The notes under the pieces are model-generated. The model was given only the letters and a program-made list of their open reading frames with translations. It was not told the DNA's origin and searched no databases. The position numbers and the translations under genes were made by a program. DNA of 63,907 nt, the filler included, from Octopus bimaculoides (taxonomy: Eukaryota): NCBI RefSeq assembly GCF_001194135.2. It is 6 parts of 6 records of this genome, joined end to end, with 100 filler letters (N's around TTAATTAATTAA, not from the genome) between each part and the next. Parts side by side here need not be neighbours in the genome. Positions count along the whole stretch, not along the records: positions 13,133 to 40,821 come from NC_069001.1; 5 more parts are not named here. One strand, 5' to 3'. Below are positions 17,690 through 40,821 of this stretch, one piece after another; within the stretch, counting starts at the first letter, position 1; the number at the start of each line of letters is the position of its first letter.

Positions 17690-18505
17690 TTGTTTATTCA
17701 CTCATTCAAAGTACTTTTAATTATCCCTTCAGCTTCCTGTAACTCCCTTCTATTTTTGATCTTGGGTTTCTTTTGGTGTATAAGGAAGGCCTCAGAGATT
17801 CTAAGGTTGCCCCTGTTCTGCTGTGTTGCCTTGATGTGCACTGTGAATTCCCGTGTCTGGCATTTCCGTAGATGTTTCTTCACGGAAGTGTCTGCCTGCA
17901 TGTGTTCCTTAATGCGTATATGCAGTTTTCATGTCGTGCTTCTGTTGTAGGATGCGCCACATTTGCCACAGATGATCTCGTATACAACATAGGTCCTCTG
18001 GTACAATTCAGGGTCATTGATGGGGCAGTTCAATAATGTGCACTCCTCGGATTAGTGATAGGTGTTGTTCTTGGACAGAGCTTTTCTCAGGGAAGGGCTA
18101 GTGTGCACTATTTGTATGTCGAGTCCTTCCTTGTAGACTGCATGTTGTATCGCTGCAGTAGTTCTGTCATCAAAGTGTGGCAGCTTTAAGAAGCACATGC
18201 CAGACTTGGGTGTATGCTGGTTCTTCTGGGGTTTATTGACCTTGATGTACTTCAGGTGCCGTTGTTTAGCTAAAGATGGTGGGTAGCCATTCAGAGTTAG
18301 GTCTCTGAGGAACTGTTTGGTGTTGATGGTTTTGTTGGTCACATTGCTGCAACTGTTGTTTATACATGCAATCTCGTTTCTCATGTATGTGGCTTTGGTG
18401 AGCAAGCGTGATTGGTAGTGGATGAAAAGTTTTCTATTAGCAGCTTTTCTGTAGAATTTGGTAAGTTGGGGCATTCCTCTGTGATCCTGAGTTGGAAGTC
18501 GAGTA
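17690..18505 (-). mobile_element. Penelope-like element remnant 2 (RT C-terminus plus GIY-YIG)
   Basis: FYRKAANRKLFIHYQS..MRNEIACINNSCS..LTLNGYPP; VVYEIICGKCGASYNRSTT; LRISEAFLIHQKKPKIKNRREL. Confidence 0.8.
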
Positions 18506-18680
18506 GAATCTTTGAGGCCATCTTCATACACCAAGAGAAACCTAAGATCAACAATAGAAAAGAGTTACATGAAGCTAGCTGGTTGCTATAGCAACACCTC
18601 TCCACACATGCTCACACACACGCACATCGACAACAATCGTCAATTTCTTGAAAATGGAGTCATAACCCTGAAATTTTGAA
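18505..18680 (+). mobile_element. Inverted copy of the PLE-2 3' end (pseudo-LTR)
   Basis: 18506-18580 aligns to the reverse complement of 17730-17808 (AGAATCT.TGAGGCC.TC.T.ATACACCAA.AGAAACC.AAGATCAA.AATAGAA..GAGTTACA.GAAGCT). Confidence 0.75.
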
Positions 18681-21789: not shown

Positions 21790-21869
<80 letters not shown>

Positions 21870-21991
21870 TTAGAACACCTACAATACTAGAAATAAGAGC
21901 TAAAGTTTTCTGATGCTACAGTAAATGCACATAATTGTATACATGCATACTGACAATGACCATAAATGGCTGAAAGTGGCAGTCATGATAT

Positions 21992-22043
21992 CCTTGTACT
22001 GTCAATGGTTTTGGCTTTAAGACTGAAGCACTCATCAGCAGGG
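21992..22043 (-). ncRNA. Type I hammerhead copy 1 (decayed: G12A, stem III damaged)
   Basis: CCCTG-CTGATGA-GTGCTT-cagtctta-AAGCC-AAAA-CCATTGACA-GTA-CAAGG. Confidence 0.65.
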
Positions 22044-22345
22044 TCAGCTCAACTCACCAGTTTCTGGACAAGATTGCCAGCAGTATATATGTCTACTCCA
22101 TTGAAATCTATGGATGATTTAGTGAATTGCTAATGTGTATACAAATAATTAAATTAGGCAGCTGTTTAGCAATGTATCATCAAAAAGGAAAACTATATTT
22201 CTCATTAAATATGACAAAGGGTGTCAGAACAGCTACAATGCTAGAAATAAGAGCTAAAATGTTCTGATTCTGCAGTCAATGCACATAATTGTATACATAC
22301 ATACTAACAGAGACAGTAAATGGCCAAAAGTGGAAGTCATGATAT

Positions 22346-22396
22346 CCCTGTACCATCGATGGTTTGGGCTTTAAGACTGAAGCCCCATCAGAAAAG
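22346..22396 (-). ncRNA. Type I hammerhead copy 2 (decayed core, intact 12-nt palindromic stem III)
   Basis: TTTT-CTGATG-GGGCTT-cagtctta-AAGCC-CAAA-CCATCGATG-GTA-CAGGG. Confidence 0.65.
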
Positions 22397-22947
22397 TCAG
22401 TCAGTATGTATGTATACAATTACGTGTGATGAATGCAGCATCAAAGTGCTTTAGCTCTTATTTCTAGCATTGTAGGTGTTCCAACACCTTCTGTTATATT
22501 TAATGACAATTATAGTTTTCCTTTTTGGTGATACATTGCTCAACAGCTGCCTAATTTACTTATATATATGTATATATATANNNNNNNNNNNNNNNNNNNN
22601 NNNNNNNNNNNNNNNNNNNNNNNNNNNNNNNNNNNNNNNNNNNNNNNNNNNNNNNNNNNNNNNNNNNNNNNNNNNNNNNNNNNNNNNNNNNNNNNNNNNN
22701 NNNNNNNNNNNNNNNNNNNNNNNNNNNNNNNNNNNNNNNNNNNNNNNNNNNNNNNNNNNNNNNNNNNNNNNNNNNNNNNNNNNNNNNNNNNNNNNNNNNN
22801 NNNNNNNNNNNNNNNNNNNNNNNNNNNNNNNNNNNNNNNNNNNNNNNNNNNNNNNNNNNNNNNNNNNNNNNNNNNNNNNNNNNNNNNNNNNNNNNNNNNN
22901 NNNNNNNNNNNNNNNNNNNNNNNNNNNNNNNNNNNNNNNNNNNNNNG

Positions 22948-24769: not shown

Positions 24770-26222
24770 GCACGCGCACGCGCGCGCATATACACATACA
24801 TCACACATATATGTATATATATATATATATATATACATATCTATATATATATATACATACATACATATATATACATACATACATACTTATATATACACAN
24901 NNNNNNNNNNNNNNNNNNNNNNNNNNNNNNNNNNNNNNNNNNNNNNNNNNNNNNNNNNNNNNNNNNNNNNNNNNNNNNNNNNNNNNNNNNNNNNNNNNNN
25001 NNNNNNNNNNNNNNNNNNNNNNNNNNNNNNNNNNNNNNNNNNNNNNNNNNNNNNNNNNNNNNNNNNNNNNNNNNNNNNNNNNNNNNNNNNNNNNNNNNNN
25101 NNNNNNNNNNNNNNNNNNNNNNNNNNNNNNNNNNNNNNNNNNNNNNNNNNNNNNNNNNNNNNNNNNNNNNNNNNNNNNNNNNNNNNNNNNNNNNNNNNNN
25201 NNNNNNNNNNNNNNNNNNNNNNNNNNNNNNNNNNNNNNNNNNNNNNNNNNNNNNNNNNNNNNNNNNNNNNNNNNNNNNNNNNNNNNNNNNNNNNNNNNNN
25301 NNNNNNNNNNNNNNNNNNNNNNNNNNNNNNNNNNNNNNNNNNNNNNNNNNNNNNNNNNNNNNNNNNNATTGGTTCAGTCCTTTATTAATTTATATAGTTT
25401 TTTGTTAAATTATTTCATTGCACTCTTGCAATCTCTTCAGTAACTTGTCTCTCCACTTCCATTTATTACCGGCATAATGCCTCTCCCAAGGTTTAATTGT
25501 ATATATATATATATATATATATCATTTATATTATTATAGGATCGAATGCTACACATTCATTTCCAAGTAAGTTTTATCTTAATATTTCAAATATGCACTC
25601 TACACTCTCTATCCTCCCTTCGCTTATTTTTCTTTCTTTCTGTTTTTCTTCTCCTCCCCCTTCACCGTTCTCTTTCTCTATCTATCTCTCCCTCACTCTT
25701 CCTCCCTGACTCTCTCATTGCTCACACGTGACCAATGGCTATCGTTCTTTTTTCCTCTTGCTTTACAAGAGATAATACCTACTTTTGCCTGTCTCTTGTC
25801 ACAGCTCCTTTCTCCAGCATCCACCACTTCACCTCGTTATGGCTTAACAGCTCTCACCATTTGTTTTTACAGTTTTGTTCTTACTGTCCTGTTTTTGTTA
25901 CTACTTTAACCCTCCGCAAATCTCAAATTTTATTTAATTTGCTTTGCGGGTAAGACTGTTCTAATGAAGTCACGTCTTGTCCTAACCTTCGAAATGCGAA
26001 GTTGATAAAACAGTGGACACCTGATGAAGGGAATGTTCTTTATGTTCCCTGTCTCATTTCTCTATTTGTTTATTTTGTTGTCTGGAAAAAAAGTTAGTTT
26101 TCCATGTTTTTGTTGTTTTTTATGTTCTCATTTTTCATTTTGTTCATGTTTTTTTGACGCCCTGCACCCATATATGCTTGTATATATACATTTATATGTA
26201 GGTATGTACATATATGTATGTA

Positions 26223-26300
<78 letters not shown>

Positions 26301-26688
26301 CATGAGCCTGGTGTTGCCATCCGGTTTCACCAGTCCTCAGTCAAATCGTCCAACCCATGCTAGCATGGAAAGCGGACGTTAAACGATGATGATGATGATG
26401 ATGATTATTTATATTATTATATGATTATATGATCAAATGCCACGCATCCATTTCCAAGTAAGCTTTATATATATATATATACATACGTATATATACATAC
26501 ATATATATACATATATACATGTATATATACATACATACACATATATATATATACATACACACATATATATATATGTATATATATATATACATACATATAT
26601 GTGCATACACATATATATATATATATATATATACACATACGTACATATATATGAATATGTACTCATATATATATATATATATAGATAA

Positions 26689-26737
<49 letters not shown>

Positions 26738-26859
26738 CATACATACATATACACACACACACATACACACACAGATAGATCTATATGAAATTAATATGAA
26801 CAGCAAATTGCAATCTTTCACCAAAAAGGAGAATTACAAATGTCACTGAATGCAACGAG

Positions 26860-27130
26860 GGTGTTAGGAAACACCTACATTGCTAGGAATAAGAGCTAAA
26901 CCACTCTCATGGTGTAGTTAACGGACATGAATGAAAATATATACACTAACAGGGACCGCAATCGTCTGAAAAGCGTCAGTCAAGAATTCTTAATACTGAC
27001 GCGTCAGTTTCAGCAATATCTGTGGCCTCATCAGTTAAGTCCCCTGTCACATTTAGTGACATTCGTTATTCTCCTTTTTGGTGAAACATTGCAAACTGCT
27101 ATTTCAATGAATTTTATATATAGACATTAA
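26860..27130 (-). mobile_element. Diverged relative of the 21.9-22.5 kb hammerhead repeat
   Basis: Shares GGGTGTTAG.AA.ACCTACA.T.CTAG.AATAAGAGCTAAA with 21866-21904, and CCTTTTTGGTGA.ACATTGC with 22520-22540. Confidence 0.65.
26989..27039 (-). ncRNA. Type I hammerhead ribozyme with all catalytic-core nucleotides intact
   Basis: Minus strand: CTTAA-CTGATGA-GGC-cacagatatt-GCT-GAAA-CTGACGCGTCA-GTA-TTAAG. Stem I CTTAA/TTAAG; stem II GGC/GCT; stem III palindrome ACTGACGCGTCAGT; GUA cleavage triplet. Confidence 0.8.
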
Positions 27131-27392
27131 CAAATCGCTAAATCATCCAATTATTTGAGTGACATAAACATACATATAAATGGTGAAGCTAGTCTAGAAA
27201 GAACCAAAATCAAGCTGATAGAAAAAAATAATTATATATATATATATACCTATACATATATACTGATGTTCACATCGTTGAAGTTTTGAATTTCTGAATT
27301 CATTTTTTTCTTTTCTTTCTATAAGTTTTTCTGTTGTTTACAGTTTTTGTAATTGTGCAGTTTATATTGGCAGATGCTTACTTTTGATATCA

Positions 27393-28995
27393 CTAACACT
27401 GATTCTTAGGAAAGCAAAGGTCTGGGTATGTATTCAAAAGCCACCAACAATAAGTTAACCACTTTTTATTCATGGATGACTTAAAACTTTTTGGTAAAGA
27501 TGAATCCCAAGTCAGTTCCCTCGTTGATACGGTGTATACTTTCAGTGCTGTTATCAGAATGGAGTTCAGACTCAAAAAGTGTGGTGTGTTAGTCTTGAAG
27601 AGAGGCAAAATCAAATGTATGGACAGGCTAGTGACACCGTTGGGGGTGGTTATGAAGCAGATAGAAGAGATGGGCTATAAGTACTTGGGGATATTGGAAA
27701 TTGATAAATTGACGGAGAAAGAAATGACAGAAATATTTAAGGCGGAGTACTTGTGCAGACTTAGACTGATACTTAAGTCAAAATTAAATAGATGGAGTAA
27801 GATTGAAGCTATCAACATCTGGGCGATTTCATTCCTTAGATATGGAGTTGGAGTAATTGTATGGACAGTAGACAAACTAAACAGCTTAGACAGAAAGACA
27901 AGGAAGTTGCTGACTAGATATGGGATACTCCAACCAAAAAGTAACACAGACAGACTGTATGTACCAAGAAAAAGAAGGGGAAGAGGACTGATTGGATTTG
28001 AACACAACATTAGAGCAGAAGAAAACAACATAGCATGGTATTTAAAAATGCCACAGAACTACTATTATTGGAAGTAAGAAGGTCAGGCTTGTGTAGGATG
28101 GAGGATTGCAAAGATAAAGTACTGTACAAGGACTTGAGAATAAAAGAAACTGAAAATAGGTGGATAAAGAAAAGAATGATTGGACAATTCCATAGGGATG
28201 TTGAAGATAAGACAGATAGAGAAAAAAAATGGCTATGGATGACTAAAAATGATTTAAAACTGGAAACAGAGGCTTTAATCTGTGCTGCCCAAGAGCAAAC
28301 ATTAAGAACCAATTACATCAAATACAGAATAGACAACACATCAGAAAGTGATAAGTGTATAATTTGTGGACAAAACGGTGAAAAAGTATGGCATATTACC
28401 AGTCAATGTATGCCACTAGCCCAGAAAGAATATAACAGACTTCATGACAATATAGCAAGGATTGTCCATTGGACACTTTGCAACAAGTACGGACTTGACA
28501 GAGCAAAAGAGTGGTAAGAACATAAACCTGAAGGCATCATGGAAAATGATAATGCAAAGATCCTATGGGATTTTATGTTTCAGTGCAACCATGAGATTGA
28601 GAATAGGAAACCAGATATTGTGCTAATTGAGAAAGAAAGCAAGTTATGCTGAATCATAGATATAGCATGCCCAGCTGACGACAAGGTATGCGATAAGGAA
28701 GAAAGAAAAGTCGAGAGATAGGACAGGTTAGCTTGGGAAATTAAGCAGTTGTGGTCACTGAAAAAGGTGGCATTAGTACCAATAATTGTTGGAGCCCTGG
28801 GAACAGTGAGTAAAAATCTTGAGAAGGGGCTGCAATAAGAGTGGAGCACTTGCAGAAAACAGCACTGCTTGGAACTGCTTGAATTCTCTGGATGGTGCTC
28901 AAAAAAATAAAATGTGTTACCTTAGTTCACTGGTAGTGGACAGCTGACACCGTAGTACATCTCCAGTGTTAGAAGCTGCGCAAAGGCAATAATAA
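27393..28995 (+). mobile_element. R4/Dong-clade LINE remnant (RT FMDD, thumb, CCHC, RLE) with (AAT)n tail
   Basis: LFMDDLKLFGKDESQV..GYKYLGILE..AINIWAISFLRY..LDRKTRKLLT..DRLYVPRKRRGRGL; CIICGQNGEKVWHITSQC..HDNIARIVHW; ILWDF..RKPDIVLIEK..IIDIACP..VPIIVGALG. Confidence 0.9.
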
Positions 28996-31589: not shown

Positions 31590-31965
31590 GAAGCCAAGGA
31601 GGAAGAGGAGGAAGAGGAAGGAGGAAGAAAAGGAGGAAGAGGGAGGAGGAGAGAGGAGGAGAGAGGAGGAGGAGGGAGGAAGAAGATGAGGAGGAAGAAG
31701 ATGAGGAGGAGGAAGAAGATGATGAGTAGGAAAATGAGGAGGAAAATGAGGTGGAGGAAGAAGAGGAAGAAGAAGAAGGAGGAGAAGGAGGAGGAGGAGG
31801 CAGAAGAAAAGGGGAAGAAGAAGCGGAGGAAGTGGAGGAAGAGGAGGAGGCTAGGGAAGGGGAGGAAGCAGAAGATGAGGTGGAAGAAGGGGTGGAAGAG
31901 GAATAGGCAGAAGCTGAGGAAAAAGAGGAGGAAAAAGAGGAGGAAGAAGGGGTGGAGGAAGCAGA
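31590..31965. repeat. Polypurine (GAG/AAG) low-complexity tract
   Basis: Seen directly. It explains ORFs 31558-32148 and 31686-32021. Confidence 0.9.
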
Positions 31966-32714
31966 CGAGAAATATTTTGCTAAAAGAAATTTACATAGAT
32001 TCTCCAAGTCCAATCTATTAGTGGCACAGTGAAAATTTGTAAGACATTCCAGAAATGCTTCATGTGAGATTCTTATGTGAATAGAGGCATACACTCGGCT
32101 GTATGCATCAACAGTCCAACTAACACTCAACCACATATTTACGAACACTGAAAATTCTCTTAACTCAGTCTTGTTAGTGAGAAGAACTTAGATAGACTCA
32201 AAGAAAAATTATACATGCATGCATACAGACATATATACATACATACATAGATTTCCATGTGTAACTATTAGCACAAGTGCAATGGGTTGTTACGTAACAG
32301 ATATGCATAAAGCTTAGAAATGTTAGGTTTGTCTAAGGAAATACTAAGGAAACTGATTCACCCTTGCCAAACAATCAAGAAGTGGAACAGTGAAAATTTG
32401 TAAGACATTTCAGAATTCTCGATATAAGTTTCCTCTAAGAGGCACATGTTCATAGATATTCTTTTGTTCTGTTTCTTGTTTTGGTCATTTGACTGTGGTC
32501 ATGTTAGGGCACTGCCTCAAAGAATTTTACTCAAGTGAATCAACCCCCAGTACTTATTTATACCTTGTTTTATATATTATTTGCAGGATTCAATTGAATT
32601 TTGGTATTTTAATAATAGGGAGATCACCCGAGTGTCAAGCATAACATATTTGTGTATCAACAATATATATGGGCACTCGTGCATATATTCAAGTATATTC
32701 AGACTTAAAAGCAA

Positions 32715-33518
32715 TAAAAACAATTTTGCATTTTCCCACAAGGCAGAAAATTTTTCTGGAATAGTGGACTGCAGCCTAAGTTCTTGGTAAGCATGCCATT
32801 TAAAAAAAAGTTTCACTTCAAAATCGTTTGGCAAGTCAATAAGTTCTCTCTCGATAGACCCATCCATGTCGATATCTGTGATCTGAAAAGGGTCCATGAT
32901 CCAAGGGGGGATTCCCAGATCTGACAAATCCTGAAAACGTAGTTTCATGTCAGTTTCAGCACTCTTGAGATGGTCTGGGAAAAGGAGAAGGGTATCCTCA
33001 GATGGGCATTCCCCGAGTTCCCTAAGGCTTGGAAATTGACAGAAGTCTTTGCGTCCAATATTTCGCTGATAAAAAGGCAGTTTTGCAATGAAACCAGAGA
33101 TGACAGACTTGGATTTCTTTGAGGTTGGTTTCAGCACCCTGCAGCTGGAGGTTCAGGTTGTTGAACTTTGTAAGAATGTCAGCCAAGTAGGCAATGAGGG
33201 GCTTGATGGCTGCTAGTTGTTCTGCTAATGACGAATCCATTAACTGTAAGAAATTAACGACACAGGTAAAGAGTCATCGCATTTCTGTGTGCAGTAGAAG
33301 CCTCTCAAATTCTTTGTCGTTTTCAGAGCACAACTGTTTGAAAAGTTGCGAATTCAATGGGTGAGCTTTGATTTTGTTCACAGTTGCAATCGCGGTAATC
33401 AGAGAAGTGCTTCGACATGGAGTGATGTTTTTAGTGACTAAATGTTGTTGATGGATGATGCAGTGAATGACTATAATATTTGGAACTGCTTGCTTGAGAA
33501 ATGCATTGAAACCTTGGA
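32715..33518 (-). mobile_element. hAT transposase remnant, Buster/Charlie type
   Basis: GFNAFLKQAVPNIIVIHCIIHQQHL (CxxH motif); KIKAHPLNSQLFKQLC..ERLLLHTEMR; YLADILTKFNNLNLQLQG; PPWIMDPF..ELIDL..IPEKFSALWENAKLFL. Confidence 0.85.
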
Positions 33519-34410
33519 CAGGTAATACCAGCAACAGGAGTTCCACTACAGATTTCTATAGCAGGTTAATGGAATTTATGTCAGATGATGTCCTGGGGGA
33601 GGCCTCAGGCTTCGATAGAAATCAGTTGATCCTGTTCAAGAGAACTTTTGGGCCAAGGTATCTTGATAATTACCAGAAATCACTGGATTGGCAGTACTAC
33701 TGTTCGGCTTTGCCTGTTTGAGACAAGCTGTCGAAGCACGGAAGTACCATTTTGCTGATATGCCCGAGGTGCAGGCCAGACAGAGAAACTGTCTTGCATG
33801 CCTTTATGGAGTGTCCAGAATTATCGGGACTGATAGCTTTTGTCGAACAACTGTTGTCAGCGATGGGAGGGGTACAGCTCTCGGCTGAGTCTATTATCAA
33901 GATTGTGTCACCTCCTTCCCTTAACAAGGAAAGGAAGGCTTGTTTTTTCTGTATAGTAGCCATACTGAAGGAAACAGCATGGAAGACACGAGTAAGAGGA
34001 TTAGTGACAGGTAGCTTCATCTCCGGCCAAGGGTTGGTTAACTTTTCTAGCTACCACCTCGATAGTAAGATCAGGCTGGAGAAGAGATACCTGTCACAGG
34101 ATATGTTTGTGAAAAGATGGAAGCCAGTAGTGAACTTGCTGCGAGTGACTCGAACCAGGTAAATGGGAAAAGTAAAAGTTTGGTGGCTGGATACCTTTCC
34201 TTTGGTTGTATACATTGCAAAATTTGCAATTAAAAATGATTATCAAATGCTTAAATTTGAAATTTAAATAGAAAAAAAATTTTTAAATATAATTTTTAAC
34301 TGCATGACATTTTTATATTATCATCTGCAACATTTTCATTTGTGGTAAAGCAATTTCTTCACCCTCTGTGTTTTACTGTCCTTGTTTGTCCCATCTGTGT
34401 AAGGCTTTTA
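33519..34410 (+). mobile_element. L1/Tx1-clade LINE ORF2 C-terminal fragment (zf-RVT-like cysteine motif)
   Basis: WQYYCSALPV*DKLSKH..CPRCRPDRETVLHAFMECP..AWKTR..RW. The 3' boundary is uncertain. Confidence 0.6.
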
Positions 34411-38328: not shown

Positions 38329-39930
38329 TCAGTTTAATTTCAAATTTAGAATTGATATAAAGAATTCTTCTTTTGCCTTTCGTAGTTGAACATTTTCATT
38401 GTTTATTTTGTAAAATGGGAATATTTTCAATTTTCCATTTGCACAGATATTTGGAAACTTGCTGCATGGGACATTCCTAAGAGGTGAATCCTTAATTTGT
38501 TACTTATGCACATTTACATGACTGGTCAGTTTCCTTTTTGTCACCCCAATGTAGTTTTCATTGCATTGTGGACATGTGATGCAGTAGATGAGGTTTTTTG
38601 GTTTTGCAATTCATATTTGCATTCACTTTTAATTCCTTCCAAATCTTTTGATTTTCCCTTCCTCAATTAATTCACATGTCTCACAACGGGGGTCTCCACA
38701 GTTGGTTACTTGCATCGTTTCTTTTCCAAATGTGAATCTTGCTTTGTTAGAAGTCTCTTGAGGTTAGGTGGTTGTCTTCGGCTGTTGATAATTTATGATT
38801 TTTCAATTATTCATTGGAGATTTGGTGATTCATATTTAATTGGGAGATGTTTGGTCGAATGCAGGATGTGGTTTCTAGGATTGTGGGTAGCTACAAATGG
38901 AATATTTGTCTTTGTATTTTTTTTTTGCACAACTAACCTGAGTGTTTCCCCATAAAGTAGAGATCAGGATTTTCTTTGCTTTTGTTATGGCATGTTGAAT
39001 CAATTTGTTGGAGTATTTTTATTTTCTGAAGGAATATATTAAGTTTAGCCAGTCGTTTCTCTCATTTAGTAGCATCTGTGACTATTGAGCATAAGCACCT
39101 TGCCATATTAAATGGTATGTTCCTTTTTGTATGGGAAGGGTGGCAAGATCTAAAATCTACATATTGGTGTGTGTCTATGTTTGTGTAGTGAAGGTAAGTT
39201 GTAACTGTCTCATTTTCTTTAATTACCAGAATAACCAGAAAGGGAGTTCCTTTTCATTCATTTCCATAGTGAATTGGATTAAGACATGGATGCTATTTAT
39301 TAATTTAAGTAATTTTGTAAGGTCCTCTTTACTTCAGTTCTAAAATATGAAGCAGTCATCTAAGAATCTTTTCCAGTTTCCCATAAGATAAGATTTGGAA
39401 ATGGTCAAAAGTAGTTCTGGATAGGGTGTAGATTTTTCTTCTAGGTATCTCATTACTAGAGTGGCAAATGTTGGTGTCACTTTTGTCCCCATCACAGTGC
39501 CTTGTATTTGTAGATAATATTGGTTATCAGAGAAGAAGTAATTTTCCAGTACTATCTGTAAACCTTCAAGTATAAATTCTTTTGAGAATTACTTCTGAAT
39601 TCTTTGTAGGTGTTAGTTTATCCAGAATTCAACTACTTCTAGTCCATATATATGGGGGATATTTCTGTAGAGACTAGTTGCATCAAAGCTAACAAGTACT
39701 ATCTCTTTATCTACCCTTTCTGGTATATGGGTTAATCTGCATAAAGGTTTTAAAATTATATCAAGAAAGTTGCTTAATCTTTGGGTGCTGGATGCTGGTC
39801 CTGCAACAATCAGATGCAATTTGAGATCAGTTGTTTTGGGAATCTTTACATATAGAGTATGGAGTGAGCTACTGTTGATATCTTTGGATTTATGGACTTT
39901 AGGAAGTCCATAAATGTTACGTGTTTTCAC
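38329..39930 (-). mobile_element. Penelope-like element remnant 3 (RT plus GIY-YIG), the longest PLE here
   Basis: YGLPKVHK..IVAGPASSTQRLSNFLDIILKP..VSFDATSLY.NIP; YLQIQGTVMGTKVTPTFA; WKRFLDDCFIF; NLIYCITCPQCNENYIGVTKRKL; FPFYKI..LRKAKEEFFI..LKLN*. Confidence 0.85.
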
Positions 39931-39934
39931 ATTA

Positions 39935-40637
39935 AAATTAGTGAGCCAGAAACTACAGCCTAGAAGAAGAGCCTCATCTTGGAAGATCTGTAGAGCTTGA
40001 CAAGAAAGTCCTGCAAACCATGGTGGAACAAAATCCCATCATAACTGTTGAGGAACTAGCAGAGAAACTTGGATTTGGTCATTCAATAATTCATCAACAC
40101 CTGTGTGCCATTGAAAAAGTCAGCAAATTGGGTCAATGAATTTTTCACAACTTTTCTGAGTTTAATCACATTCAGAGAGTGAATGTGTGGTCTTCTCTGC
40201 TGTCACATCTCGTAAATGAACCTTTTACAGACTGAACAGTGACTGATGATGAGAAATGGGCTCTCTATAAAAATGTGAAGTGGCAAAGGCAGTGGGTAGG
40301 GAAAGGAGGAACACCAGAACCCCAGGCTAAAGAAGGTCTTCACCCATGTAAGGTGCTATCTCTTTGGTGGGATATGAAAGGTTTAGTCCACTTTGAACTT
40401 TTAAACTCAAACCAAATGAGAACAAGGAAGATCTACTGCGAGCAGCTTGAGTGGCTTAAGTAAGCACTTGAAGAAAAACAACCATCTTTGGTTTCAAGAC
40501 GAAAGGTGTTCTTCCATCAGGATAATACTTGGCCATATTCAGTGAGGATGACATTCCAAAGGCTGGAGCAGTTTGAATGGCAAATGATGTCCCACCCACC
40601 GTATTCACCAGACATTGCCCCAACTAATTATCATTGA
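39935..40637 (+). mobile_element. Mariner transposase remnant (catalytic domain up to the YSPDLAP motif)
   Basis: VTDDEKWALYKN; HPCKVL.SLWWDMKGLVHFELL; FHQDNT; HPPYSPDIAPTNYH. Confidence 0.85.
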
Positions 40638-40821
40638 GTTCGAGCGAGATCGTTGCCAGTGCCCCTGAACTGGCTCTTGTGTGGGGCCGTCGTAGGATTT
40701 TTGAGCGAGATCGTTGCCGGTGCCCCTGGACTGGCTCATGTGCGGGCGACACACGAAATCTTTCGAGCGAGATCGTTGCCAGTGCCCCTGGACTGGCTCA
40801 TGTGCGGGCGACACATGAAAT
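40638..40821 (+). repeat. Tandem 61-62 bp GC-rich repeat (3 or more units, running into a gap)
   Basis: GAGCGAGATCGTTGCC(A/G)GTGCCCCTG(A/G)ACTGGCTC at 40642, 40703 and 40765. Confidence 0.9.

What the first reader, a model, noticed from the sequence alone, without database searches (positions are those of the whole stretch)
26989..27039. Apparently intact type I hammerhead ribozyme with a 14-nt palindromic stem III
Seen: the minus strand reads CTTAA-CTGATGA-GGC-cacagatatt-GCT-GAAA-CTGACGCGTCA-GTA-TTAAG. Every conserved core base is present (CUGANGA, GAAA, UH). Stem I is a perfect 5 bp, stem II is 3 bp with one G-U that looks like a CpG-decay product, and stem III is the perfect palindrome ACTGACGCGTCAGT. 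Established: type I HHRs occur in PLE pseudo-LTRs and metazoan retrozymes, usually with very short stem III. Inference: this copy could fold as a monomer and self-cleave after GUA (between 26994 and 26993), cutting any minus-strand transcript or pre-mRNA that crosses it.
Basis: partly seen in the sequence, partly recalled or inferred. Interest (0 to 1): 0.85.

Follow-up and report, generated by a model that had tools for sequence, protein, structure and literature searches.

The report
Hammerhead ribozyme motif in foldback repeat
The sequence really does contain a complete type I hammerhead ribozyme motif, but it belongs to a non-coding hairpin-shaped repeat present three times in this piece, so it is most likely one more ribozyme-carrying mobile element of a kind already known in animals.

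Summary
All core bases are present: CUGAUGA, GAAA, UA. Helix I is 5 bp, helix II 3 bp, helix III 5 bp plus a CGCG loop inside a 14-nt palindrome. A descriptor as strict as the match is expected 0.006 times in this piece but about 200 times per Gb, so the match alone proves little.

The context is what counts. The motif sits at the apex of a foldback repeat, 26782-27200, with inverted arms. Two more copies lie at 22061-22580 and 21865-22060. Their homologous motifs keep 11/13 and 12/13 core positions against about 40% identity elsewhere, with compensatory changes in helices I and III. The 11.1/12 dinucleotide reads TG, CA and CC, pointing to an ancestral CpG in a canonical GCC|GAAA.

The ribozyme is therefore probably ancestral to the family. 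This is a solo copy whose helix II is weakened to G10.1·U11.1.

It best fits a non-LTR retrozyme-like element in a genome that also holds Penelope-like fragments. Tandem organisation, circular RNA and cleavage are not shown, and Rfam's Hammerhead_1 model does not recognise it. No further copies could be retrieved. Interest is modest.

The parts
26989..27039 (-). Type I hammerhead motif, copy C. Helix I 5' strand is 27035-27039 and CUGAUGA is 27028-27034. Helix II is 27012-27027 (GGC / 10-nt loop / GCU). GAA is 27009-27011 and the helix III palindrome is 26995-27008. H17 is A at 26994, and the helix I 3' strand is 26989-26993. The predicted cleavage site is 26994|26993.
   Evidence: It is the only descriptor hit in the piece and appeared in 0 of 300 shuffles.
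26782..27200 (-). Foldback repeat copy C, which carries the motif. The inverted arms are 26782-26866 and 27036-27120 (83% complementary). An outer arm extension reaches about 27200. The left end is lost in a microsatellite. The right arm (5' in RNA sense) lacks about 90 nt that copy B has.
   Evidence: (rod-like fold, -136.6 kcal/mol, z -12.8).
22061..22580 (-). Foldback repeat copy B. The arms 22139-22311 and 22397-22569 are 85% complementary, and the left arm extends out to 22061. The right end runs into the N gap 22581-22946. The homologous hammerhead at 22346-22396 has core mutations A9G and G12C. Its helix III is the palindrome ACCATCGATGGT.
   Evidence: (fold -227.5 kcal/mol, z -24).
21865..22060 (-). 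Partial copy A, in the same orientation and directly abutting copy B. It has the inner arm and central domain. The homologous hammerhead at 21992-22043 has an intact CUGAUGA, G12A, and a degraded helix III.
26971..27002 (.). Second, overlapping palindrome centred on GAATTC (GCGTCAGT...ACTGACGC). In RNA it lets the 3' half of helix III and the helix I 3' strand pair with downstream sequence, which gives an alternative inactive hairpin.
38400..40640 (-). Context: a degraded Penelope-like element fragment. A reverse transcriptase (YGLPKVHK ... FLDD) is followed by a GIY-YIG-like motif (IYCITCPQCNENYIGVT). No hammerhead motif lies next to it.
   Evidence: (RVT_1 25.6 bits, E 1.2e-5; GIY-YIG 14.5 bits, E 0.044; both below Pfam cut-offs).
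17700..18534 (-). Context: a second Penelope-like fragment, consisting of the linker plus a GIY-YIG-like motif (VVYEIICGKCGASY...KLHIRIKEH).
   Evidence: The motif was read directly from the translation, and Pfam gave no significant hit.

Best explanation
The motif is the ribozyme module of a non-coding, hairpin-shaped interspersed repeat of roughly 0.45-0.6 kb, with long inverted arms and a central domain of about 95 nt. The founder of the family carried a canonical type I hammerhead: CUGAUGA, helix II closed by G10.1-C11.1, GAAA, a palindromic helix III, and GUA.

The closest known kind is the animal non-LTR retrozyme. In these elements, transcripts of repeat arrays cut themselves at the hammerhead. 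The unit-length RNA is ligated into a highly self-paired circle and is copied back into DNA, probably by Penelope-like-element machinery.

Copy C at 26782-27200 is a solo insertion. It keeps every catalytic base and all three helices. A CpG-to-TpG change has turned G10.1-C11.1 into a G-U wobble, and one arm is about 90 nt shorter than in copy B.

If a transcript runs through it on the minus strand, it could cleave after A26994. This could happen as a monomer (5-bp helix III) or as a dimer through the 14-nt palindrome. With a single ribozyme it cannot release a unit-length RNA.

Shown: the motif, the repeat family, the foldback structure, core conservation with helix covariation, and the CpG pattern. 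Inferred: ribozyme ancestry, the retrozyme-type life cycle, and any cleavage.
For: - The motif is exact and is the only one in the piece. It appeared in 0 of 300 shuffles.
- Three homologous copies were found by blastn, MAFFT and nhmmer.
- In a structure-guided alignment, core positions are conserved 11/13 (C vs B) and 12/13 (C vs A). Non-core positions are conserved 18/41 and 16/41 (Fisher p 0.011 and 0.0007).
- Helix I pairs change on both sides and stay paired (AU to UA, AU to GC, UA to CG). Helix III shows UA to CG.
- Helix III is a perfect palindrome in both subfamilies, ACTGACGCGTCAGT and ACCATCGATGGT. Palindromy of helix III / loop 3 is a described hallmark of metazoan type I hammerheads (PMC4209133).
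- Positions 11.1/12 read TG, CA and CC in the three copies. Two of these are the two deamination products of CpG, in a piece with CpG o/e 0.31.
- The whole elements fold as rods far beyond shuffled controls, z -12.8 and -24. This matches the 'highly self-paired' retrozyme RNAs (PMC7229834).
- The element has no ORF over 70 aa and its GC is 33-40%.
- Reported retrozyme consensus lengths span 51-972 bp, and solo monomers are common (preprint 10.64898/2026.07.22.740005).
- Penelope-like fragments lie in the same piece.
- Copy C retains 9 CpG against 2 and 0 in B and A. It is the least decayed copy, which explains the intact core without invoking selection.
Against: - There are only three copies, and two of them are closely related, so the covariation is suggestive and not statistical.
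- MAFFT plus RNAalifold did not recover the hammerhead fold from the three sequences, because the alignment was out of register.
- No Rfam hammerhead model matches at threshold.
- Tandem head-to-tail organisation, the defining retrozyme arrangement, is not seen for copy C.
- The RNA between the B and A cleavage sites (354 nt) is not self-paired (z -0.23).
- The helix III palindrome lies near the symmetry centre of the foldback. Its conservation could be a by-product of whole-element palindromy.
- Long near-perfect inverted arms fit a DNA-transposon MITE or foldback element equally well. The ends and target-site duplications could not be read, because each copy has one end lost.
- No copy from any other locus or genome could be retrieved.
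Confidence: 0.68

Rival explanations
1. The family is a foldback or MITE-type DNA transposon with no ribozyme history. Its resemblance to a hammerhead is coincidence, helped by a central palindrome that supplies 'helix III' for free.
For: - The arms are long inverted repeats of at least about 170-245 nt with 83-85% complementarity.
- The palindrome lies within a few nt of the symmetry centre of the foldback.
- Chance matches to the strict descriptor occur about 0.1 per Mb per strand. Some repeat consensus in a large genome could match by luck.
- Rfam does not recognise the motif.
Against: - The strands of helix I are not symmetric about the palindrome, yet they covary.
- The central domain of about 95 nt is otherwise not palindromic.
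- The core is far better conserved than its surroundings across subfamilies that are about 71% identical.
- The inferred ancestral GCC|GAAA restores the canonical G10.1-C11.1 pair and G12.
Confidence: 0.13
2. The motif is a Penelope-like-element terminal-repeat (pLTR) hammerhead, that is, part of an autonomous PLE rather than of a separate non-autonomous repeat.
For: PLE fragments occur in the piece. PLE terminal repeats carry type I hammerheads with palindromic helix III (PMC4209133). Retrozymes are reported to derive from pLTRs.
Against: - The nearest PLE coding fragments are about 8.5 kb and 11.4 kb away.
- The adjacent reverse-transcriptase fragment (27385-28887, + strand) is a LINE on the opposite strand.
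- Metazoan PLE hammerheads have no helix III or a 1-2 bp one, a long helix II and a bulged base after A9. None of these features is present here.
- No hammerhead-like pattern lies next to either PLE fragment.
Confidence: 0.06
3. It is an exapted, host-functional ribozyme, for example an intronic one, that is kept intact by selection and cleaves a specific host transcript.
For: All catalytic bases and all helices are intact, while the two sister copies have core mutations.
Against: - No gene evidence was found on the minus strand. The surroundings are microsatellites, N gaps and transposon fragments.
- Copy C is simply the least CpG-decayed copy, so an intact core is expected from youth alone.
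- The G10.1-C11.1 pair is already damaged.
Confidence: 0.05
4. It is a box C/D snoRNA, since UGAUGA resembles a C box and CUGA a D box.
For: Weak Rfam hits: SNORD49 at 12.5 bits and sR52 at 14.6 bits.
Against: The scores are far below gathering (37 and 50). No terminal stem joins the sequences directly flanking the boxes.
Confidence: 0.01

Closest known systems
Non-LTR retrozymes of invertebrates (coral, jellyfish, mussel; Cervera & de la Pena 2020, PMC7229834)
   Same: - A type I hammerhead in a short, AT-rich, non-coding repeat whose RNA is predicted to be highly self-paired.
- Helix III longer than in vertebrates and palindromic (coral: ACAGUACUGU).
- A 3-bp helix II also occurs in the active mussel ribozyme.
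- Penelope-like elements are present in the same genome.
   Different: - This copy is solo, and no head-to-tail array is seen.
- The element is larger, about 0.45-0.6 kb against 170-400 nt.
- The arms are long and almost continuously paired, with the ribozyme at the apex.
- There is no sequence similarity to the published coral or mussel units.
- No RNA data are available.
Minimal hammerheads of metazoan Penelope-like-element terminal repeats (Cervera & de la Pena 2014, PMC4209133)
   Same: Type I topology, a palindromic helix III region that would allow dimer formation, and association with retroelement-rich genomes.
   Different: Here helix III is 5 bp plus a tetraloop rather than 0-2 bp, helix II is short, there is no bulge after A9, and the motif does not flank a PLE reading frame.
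Satellite and SINE hammerheads: newt satellite 2, Schistosoma Sm-alpha, Dolichopoda pDo500 (PMC2837043)
   Same: A hammerhead embedded in a repeat. The core is more conserved than the rest of the repeat, with compensatory changes in the stems.
   Different: Those are tandem satellites or tRNA-derived SINEs, and Rfam RF00163 recognises them. This is a dispersed foldback repeat that RF00163 does not score.
Type I hammerheads with a large helix III in fungal/protist PLEs and bacteria (PMC4209133)
   Same: A stable helix III that allows monomeric folding, and no recognisable canonical loop 1-loop 2 contacts.
   Different: The host lineage and sequence differ. The animal-type palindromic helix III is retained here.

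Membership tests
Hammerhead ribozyme, type I (motif definition) | Conserved core: C3 U4 G5 A6 N7 G8 A9, G12 A13 A14, A15.1-U16.1, and H17 not G | tested here: met
   All are present in copy C. Copy A has G12A. Copy B has A9G and G12C.
Hammerhead ribozyme, type I (motif definition) | Three helices around the core, with helix I open and helices II and III capped | tested here: met
   Helices are 5, 3 and 5 bp. An extended helix I with a 3-nt bulge can be drawn in all three copies (sequences; my reading).
Hammerhead ribozyme, type I (motif definition) | Conserved G10.1-C11.1 pair closing helix II | tested here: not met
   Copy C has G-U (GGC...GCU). Copies A and B have G-C. The literature describes this pair as highly conserved.
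Hammerhead ribozyme, type I (motif definition) | Match to Rfam RF00163 (or another hammerhead model) at gathering score | tested here: not met
   There is no hit at gathering and none at E<=10 over 601 nt. Over 91 nt the hit is 11.6 bits against 34, in the wrong register.
Hammerhead ribozyme, type I (motif definition) | Mg2+-dependent site-specific self-cleavage | not testable with these tools
   This needs an in vitro transcription and cleavage assay. The nearest-neighbour energy test does not discriminate: 3e-6 here against 4.7e-6 for the active mussel ribozyme.
Non-LTR retrozyme | Head-to-tail tandem repeats, each unit with one hammerhead | tested here: not met
   Copy C is solo. Copies A and B are adjacent in the same orientation with cleavage sites 354 nt apart, but A lacks one arm and that unit is not self-paired. 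An N gap follows copy B. Solo monomers are nevertheless reported as common.
Non-LTR retrozyme | Non-coding and low GC, without LTR, PBS or PPT | tested here: met
   There is no ORF over 70 aa, GC is 0.33-0.40, and there are no direct terminal repeats.
Non-LTR retrozyme | Unit RNA predicted to be highly self-paired | tested here: met
   z is -12.8 for copy C and -24 for copy B.
Non-LTR retrozyme | Expressed as linear and circular RNA of unit length | not testable with these tools
   No transcriptome is available, and the source organism was not identified.
Non-LTR retrozyme | Co-occurrence with Penelope-like elements in the genome | tested here: met
   A reverse transcriptase followed by GIY-YIG-like motifs lies on the minus strand at 38400-40640 and about 17700-18534. 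Pfam support is weak and sub-threshold.
Penelope-like-element pLTR hammerhead | Located in the repeats flanking a PLE reading frame, with minimal helix III, a long helix II and a bulge after A9 | tested here: not met
   The PLE fragments are at least 8.5 kb away, and the architecture differs.
MITE / foldback DNA transposon | Terminal inverted repeats | tested here: met
MITE / foldback DNA transposon | Constant target-site duplication and defined termini shared with an autonomous transposon | tested here: inconclusive
   Only one end per copy is readable: 22061 for B and about 27200 for C. The other ends lie in an N gap or a microsatellite.

The most novel reading that the evidence does not exclude
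The family may be a kind of hammerhead-bearing element not yet described. It would be a long-inverted-repeat (foldback or MITE-like) mobile element that places a type I hammerhead at the apex of a hairpin of about 170-245 bp. The ribozyme would cut the loop of a long hairpin transcript rather than release units from a tandem array. It might link ribozyme processing to double-stranded or small-RNA biogenesis, or be a DNA transposon that has captured a ribozyme.
Probability: 0.15. Interest if true: 0.55.

Novelty: new member of a known kind. Interest (0 to 1): 0.3.

Why it matters
Type I hammerheads in animal repeats are already known in thousands to more than 100,000 copies per genome, so one more family changes little. 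The modest value lies in three things:
- It is a clean example in which three decayed copies allow the ancestral ribozyme to be reconstructed, with CpG decay hitting opposite strands at positions 11.1/12.
- The architecture is unusual, with the ribozyme at the tip of a long foldback and a 12-14-nt palindromic helix III. This could inform how such elements switch between monomeric, dimeric and inactive rod conformations.
- Rfam RF00163 misses it, so covariance-model scans undercount such variants.

Tried and rejected
**Rfam**
- Gathering and permissive scans gave no hammerhead family. The only RF00163 hit is 11.6 bits in the wrong register.
- The mir-297 and mir-466 hits nearby are TG/TA microsatellite artefacts.

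**Fetching more family copies: all attempts failed**
- The metagenome 18-mer scan gave 33 loci, all chance matches.
- A 26-nt degenerate pattern found nothing in prokaryote genome contigs or viral contigs.
- A search with spurious ORFs of the repeat found nothing.
- Contigs carrying the closest LINE and hAT relatives (L001, L035, L036, L037) hold no copy and have different GC and CpG content, so they come from other species.
- Exact look-ups of three window ORFs found no record.

**Other tests**
- Organism identification failed. The best clue is that the LINE is about 71% identical in DNA to a contig from a jellyfish-associated metagenome, and the named protein hits are cnidarian or sponge.
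- RNAalifold on a MAFFT alignment of the three motifs was misaligned and uninformative.
- I considered using thermodynamic stability as an argument against activity. I rejected it after calibration on active coral and mussel ribozymes.
- I tested the tandem-retrozyme reading of copies A and B. The 354-nt unit between their cleavage sites folds no better than shuffles.
- The C/D snoRNA reading was rejected on scores and on the lack of a terminal stem.
- Relaxed and degenerate-core descriptors found no other hammerhead in the piece, including near the PLE fragments.

Full report
**1. Observation**

The minus strand from 27039 to 26989 reads CTTAA CTGATGA GGC CACAGATATT GCT GAAA CTGACGCGTCAG TA TTAAG. 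In standard hammerhead numbering:

| Element | Window coordinates |
|---|---|
| Helix I, 5' strand | 27035-27039 |
| C3-A9 (CUGAUGA) | 27028-27034 |
| Helix II (3 bp, 10-nt loop) | 27012-27027 |
| G12 A13 A14 | 27009-27011 |
| Helix III, from A15.1 to U16.1 | 26995-27008 |
| H17 (A) | 26994 |
| Helix I, 3' strand | 26989-26993 |

- The topology is type I, and the predicted cleavage site is 26994|26993.
- The 14-nt palindrome gives 5 bp plus a CGCG tetraloop within one molecule. It gives a 14-bp duplex only between two molecules. RNAcofold predicts a dimer at -31.3 kcal/mol.
- A descriptor I wrote finds this as the only hit in 13133-40821.

**2. Chance**

- With thresholds equal to the match, 0 of 300 dinucleotide shuffles of the piece gave a hit. 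Relaxed thresholds (4/3/2 bp) gave 0.05 hits per shuffle.
- In 72 Mb of first-order Markov sequence the strict descriptor hit 8 times. That is about 0.006 expected for this piece but about 200 per Gb.
- The match is therefore locally significant, but a lone match in a genome-wide scan would not be convincing.

**3. What Rfam says**

- No family reaches gathering score anywhere in the piece.
- No hammerhead model appears at E<=10 over 601 nt.
- Over 91 nt, RF00163 scores 11.6 bits against a gathering score of 34, and it aligns the wrong CUGA.
- By that curated model the sequence is not a member. The likely reason is the long helix III and non-canonical loops, but this remains a failed test.

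**4. Context: a foldback repeat family**

The piece is AT-rich (35% GC) eukaryotic DNA. It is full of microsatellites, N gaps and transposon fragments.

Copy C:
- The motif lies between inverted arms at 26782-26866 and 27036-27120 (83% complementary).
- The arm continues outward to about 27200 by homology with copy B.
- Relative to B, the right arm lacks about 90 nt.

blastn, MAFFT and nhmmer find two more copies and no others.

Copy B (22061-22580):
- It is a nearly continuous hairpin, with arms 22139-22311 and 22397-22569 that are 85% complementary.
- A central domain of about 95 nt carries the homologous motif at 22346-22396.
- Its right end runs into an N gap.

Copy A (21865-22060):
- It has the inner arm and central domain, with the motif at 21992-22043.
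- It abuts copy B in the same orientation.

As RNA, the minus strands of C and B fold as rods at -136.6 and -227.5 kcal/mol. Their z-scores are -12.8 and -24 against shuffles. Copies A and B are 85% identical to each other, and each is about 71% identical to C. C therefore represents a different subfamily.

**5. Is the hammerhead a property of the family?**

I used a structure-guided alignment, which needs one 2-nt indel in loop II and one in helix III. It is clearly better than the ungapped alignment. In that alignment:

- **Core versus non-core.** The 13 core positions are conserved 11/13 (C vs B) and 12/13 (C vs A). The 41 non-core positions are conserved 18/41 and 16/41. Fisher p values are 0.011 and 0.0007.
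- **Helix I.** It differs almost completely between subfamilies: CUUAA/UUAAG in C, CCCUG/CAAGG in A, CUUUU/CAGGG in B. It still stays largely paired, with three pairs changed on both sides. Its two strands are not symmetric about the element's centre, so whole-element palindromy cannot explain the pairing.
- **Helix III.** It is a perfect palindrome of different sequence in C (ACTGACGCGTCAGT) and B (ACCATCGATGGT). In A it is degraded, partly by CpG-to-TpG change.
- **Positions 11.1/12.** The dinucleotide is TG in C, CA in A and CC in B. TG and CA are the two deamination products of CpG. The piece has CpG o/e 0.31 and a TpG+CpA excess of 1.30. The simplest ancestor is GCC|GAAA, which has a canonical G10.1-C11.1 pair and G12.

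It also shows that copy C is itself slightly damaged.

Caveats:
- There are three sequences, and two of them are related.
- The palindrome lies within a few nt of the symmetry centre of the foldback.
- RNAalifold on the automatic alignment recovered nothing.

I put ribozyme ancestry of the family at roughly 0.85.

**6. Could copy C cleave?**

- All catalytic bases are present.
- The nearest-neighbour energy of the active fold is -2.3 kcal/mol against an MFE of -9.2. In the MFE the CUGAUG core pairs with the 3' half of helix III. The three-helix fold makes up about 3e-6 of the ensemble.
- The same calculation on ribozymes with measured activity gives 7.7e-4 for coral (about 0.8 per min) and 4.7e-6 for mussel (about 0.1 per min). 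Sequences are and rates. The calculation therefore does not argue against activity.
- Restoring C11.1 raises the fraction to 7.4e-4.
- Downstream, a second palindrome (26971-27002) offers a stable alternative hairpin once it has been transcribed. This is the kind of active/inactive switch known from viroid-like RNAs.
- Negatives from established knowledge: the G10.1-C11.1 pair is highly conserved, helix I is AU-rich, and canonical loop 1-loop 2 contacts cannot be recognised.
- My estimate that cleavage would be detectable in vitro is about 0.5.
- A solo unit with one ribozyme can only cut a read-through transcript in two. It cannot release a unit-length RNA.

**7. Comparison with known systems**

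- **Non-LTR retrozymes.** Animal type I hammerheads mostly reside in these elements. They are 150-450 bp tandem repeats, AT-rich and non-coding, with highly self-paired circular RNAs. Helix III is longer in invertebrates than in amphibians (PMC7229834).
- **Range of known retrozymes.** A 2026 preprint reports consensus lengths of 51-972 bp, monomer fractions from 0 to 1, and derivation from Penelope-like-element terminal repeats.
- **Palindromic helix III.** Palindromy of helix III / loop 3 is a described hallmark tied to dimeric action (PMC4209133). The coral ribozyme has a 10-nt palindromic helix III, and the mussel ribozyme has a 3-bp helix II.
- **Penelope-like elements in this piece.** Two degraded fragments (reverse transcriptase followed by GIY-YIG-like motifs) are present, read from translations. 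Pfam support is weak.

The element matches retrozymes in ribozyme type, lack of coding capacity, base composition, self-pairing and genomic company. It fails on demonstrated tandem organisation. The A-B pair gives a 354-nt unit between cleavage sites that is not self-paired (z -0.23).

It is not a PLE terminal-repeat hammerhead, in either position or architecture. A DNA-transposon foldback or MITE identity for the carrier cannot be excluded, because each copy has lost one end.

**8. Age**

Copy C keeps 9 CpG in 419 nt. Copy B has 2 in 520 nt and copy A has 0 in 196 nt. C is the least decayed copy, which suffices to explain why its core is intact. No evidence for host selection or for a crossing gene was found.

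**9. Source organism**

It was not identified.
- The adjacent LINE fragment (27385-28887, + strand) is about 71% identical in DNA to a contig from a jellyfish-associated metagenome and to other ENA contigs.
- The named protein relatives are cnidarian or sponge, at 50-57% identity.
- None of the fetched contigs carries the repeat.

**10. Verdict**

This is a genuine hammerhead-derived motif belonging to a foldback repeat family. It is most likely a retrozyme-type non-autonomous element and a new member of a known kind. The unusual features are the long hairpin arms, the apical position of the ribozyme, and the 12-14-nt palindromic helix III. Activity, RNA products and the mode of mobilisation remain untested.

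Noticed in passing
window 38400-40640 (-) and about 17700-18534 (-): Two degraded Penelope-like element fragments. Each has a reverse transcriptase followed by a GIY-YIG-like endonuclease motif, with many stops and frameshifts. No hammerhead motif lies beside them.
   Followed up: partly
window 27385-28887 (+): A 5'-truncated LINE fragment: the reverse-transcriptase C-terminal part plus a zf-RVT-like cysteine motif. It starts about 185 bp from the foldback repeat, on the opposite strand. It is about 71% identical in DNA to contigs L036 (jellyfish-associated metagenome) and L037.
   Followed up: partly
window 32577-33546 (-): hAT-like transposase remnants (LLLHTEMR... dimerisation-region-like). 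Only one relative turned up among 5.8 billion proteins (P0121, 76% over 37% of the query). Its contig L035 is 81% identical in DNA over 296 nt.
   Followed up: partly
window 13133-40821 (whole piece): There is strong CpG depletion (o/e 0.31) with a TpG+CpA excess (1.30) at 35% GC, which implies heavy germline CpG methylation. The related contigs from other species show o/e 0.44-0.65.
   Followed up: partly
window 40639-40821: A GC-rich 62-bp tandem repeat with 3 copies at 86% match. It is cut off by the end of the piece and contrasts with the AT-rich surroundings.
   Followed up: no
window 25526-25585 and 26417-26476: A 60-nt direct repeat at 83% identity, 891 bp apart, with each copy next to a (TA)n microsatellite. 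It may be another small repeat family associated with microsatellites.
   Followed up: no
window 22581-22946: An assembly gap of 366 N starts exactly where the right arm of copy B ends. Further copies of the hammerhead repeat (a tandem array) could be hidden there.
   Followed up: no
window 31597-31969: A long purine-rich AGG/GAA-type low-complexity array with periods of 3, 12 and 15. It produces spurious Ser/Glu/Lys-rich ORFs on both strands.
   Followed up: no
window 26700-26790 and 27220-27285: Sub-threshold Rfam 'mir-297/mir-466/mir-1277' hits, up to 49 bits against a gathering score of 90. These are TG/TA microsatellite artefacts, not microRNA genes.
   Followed up: yes
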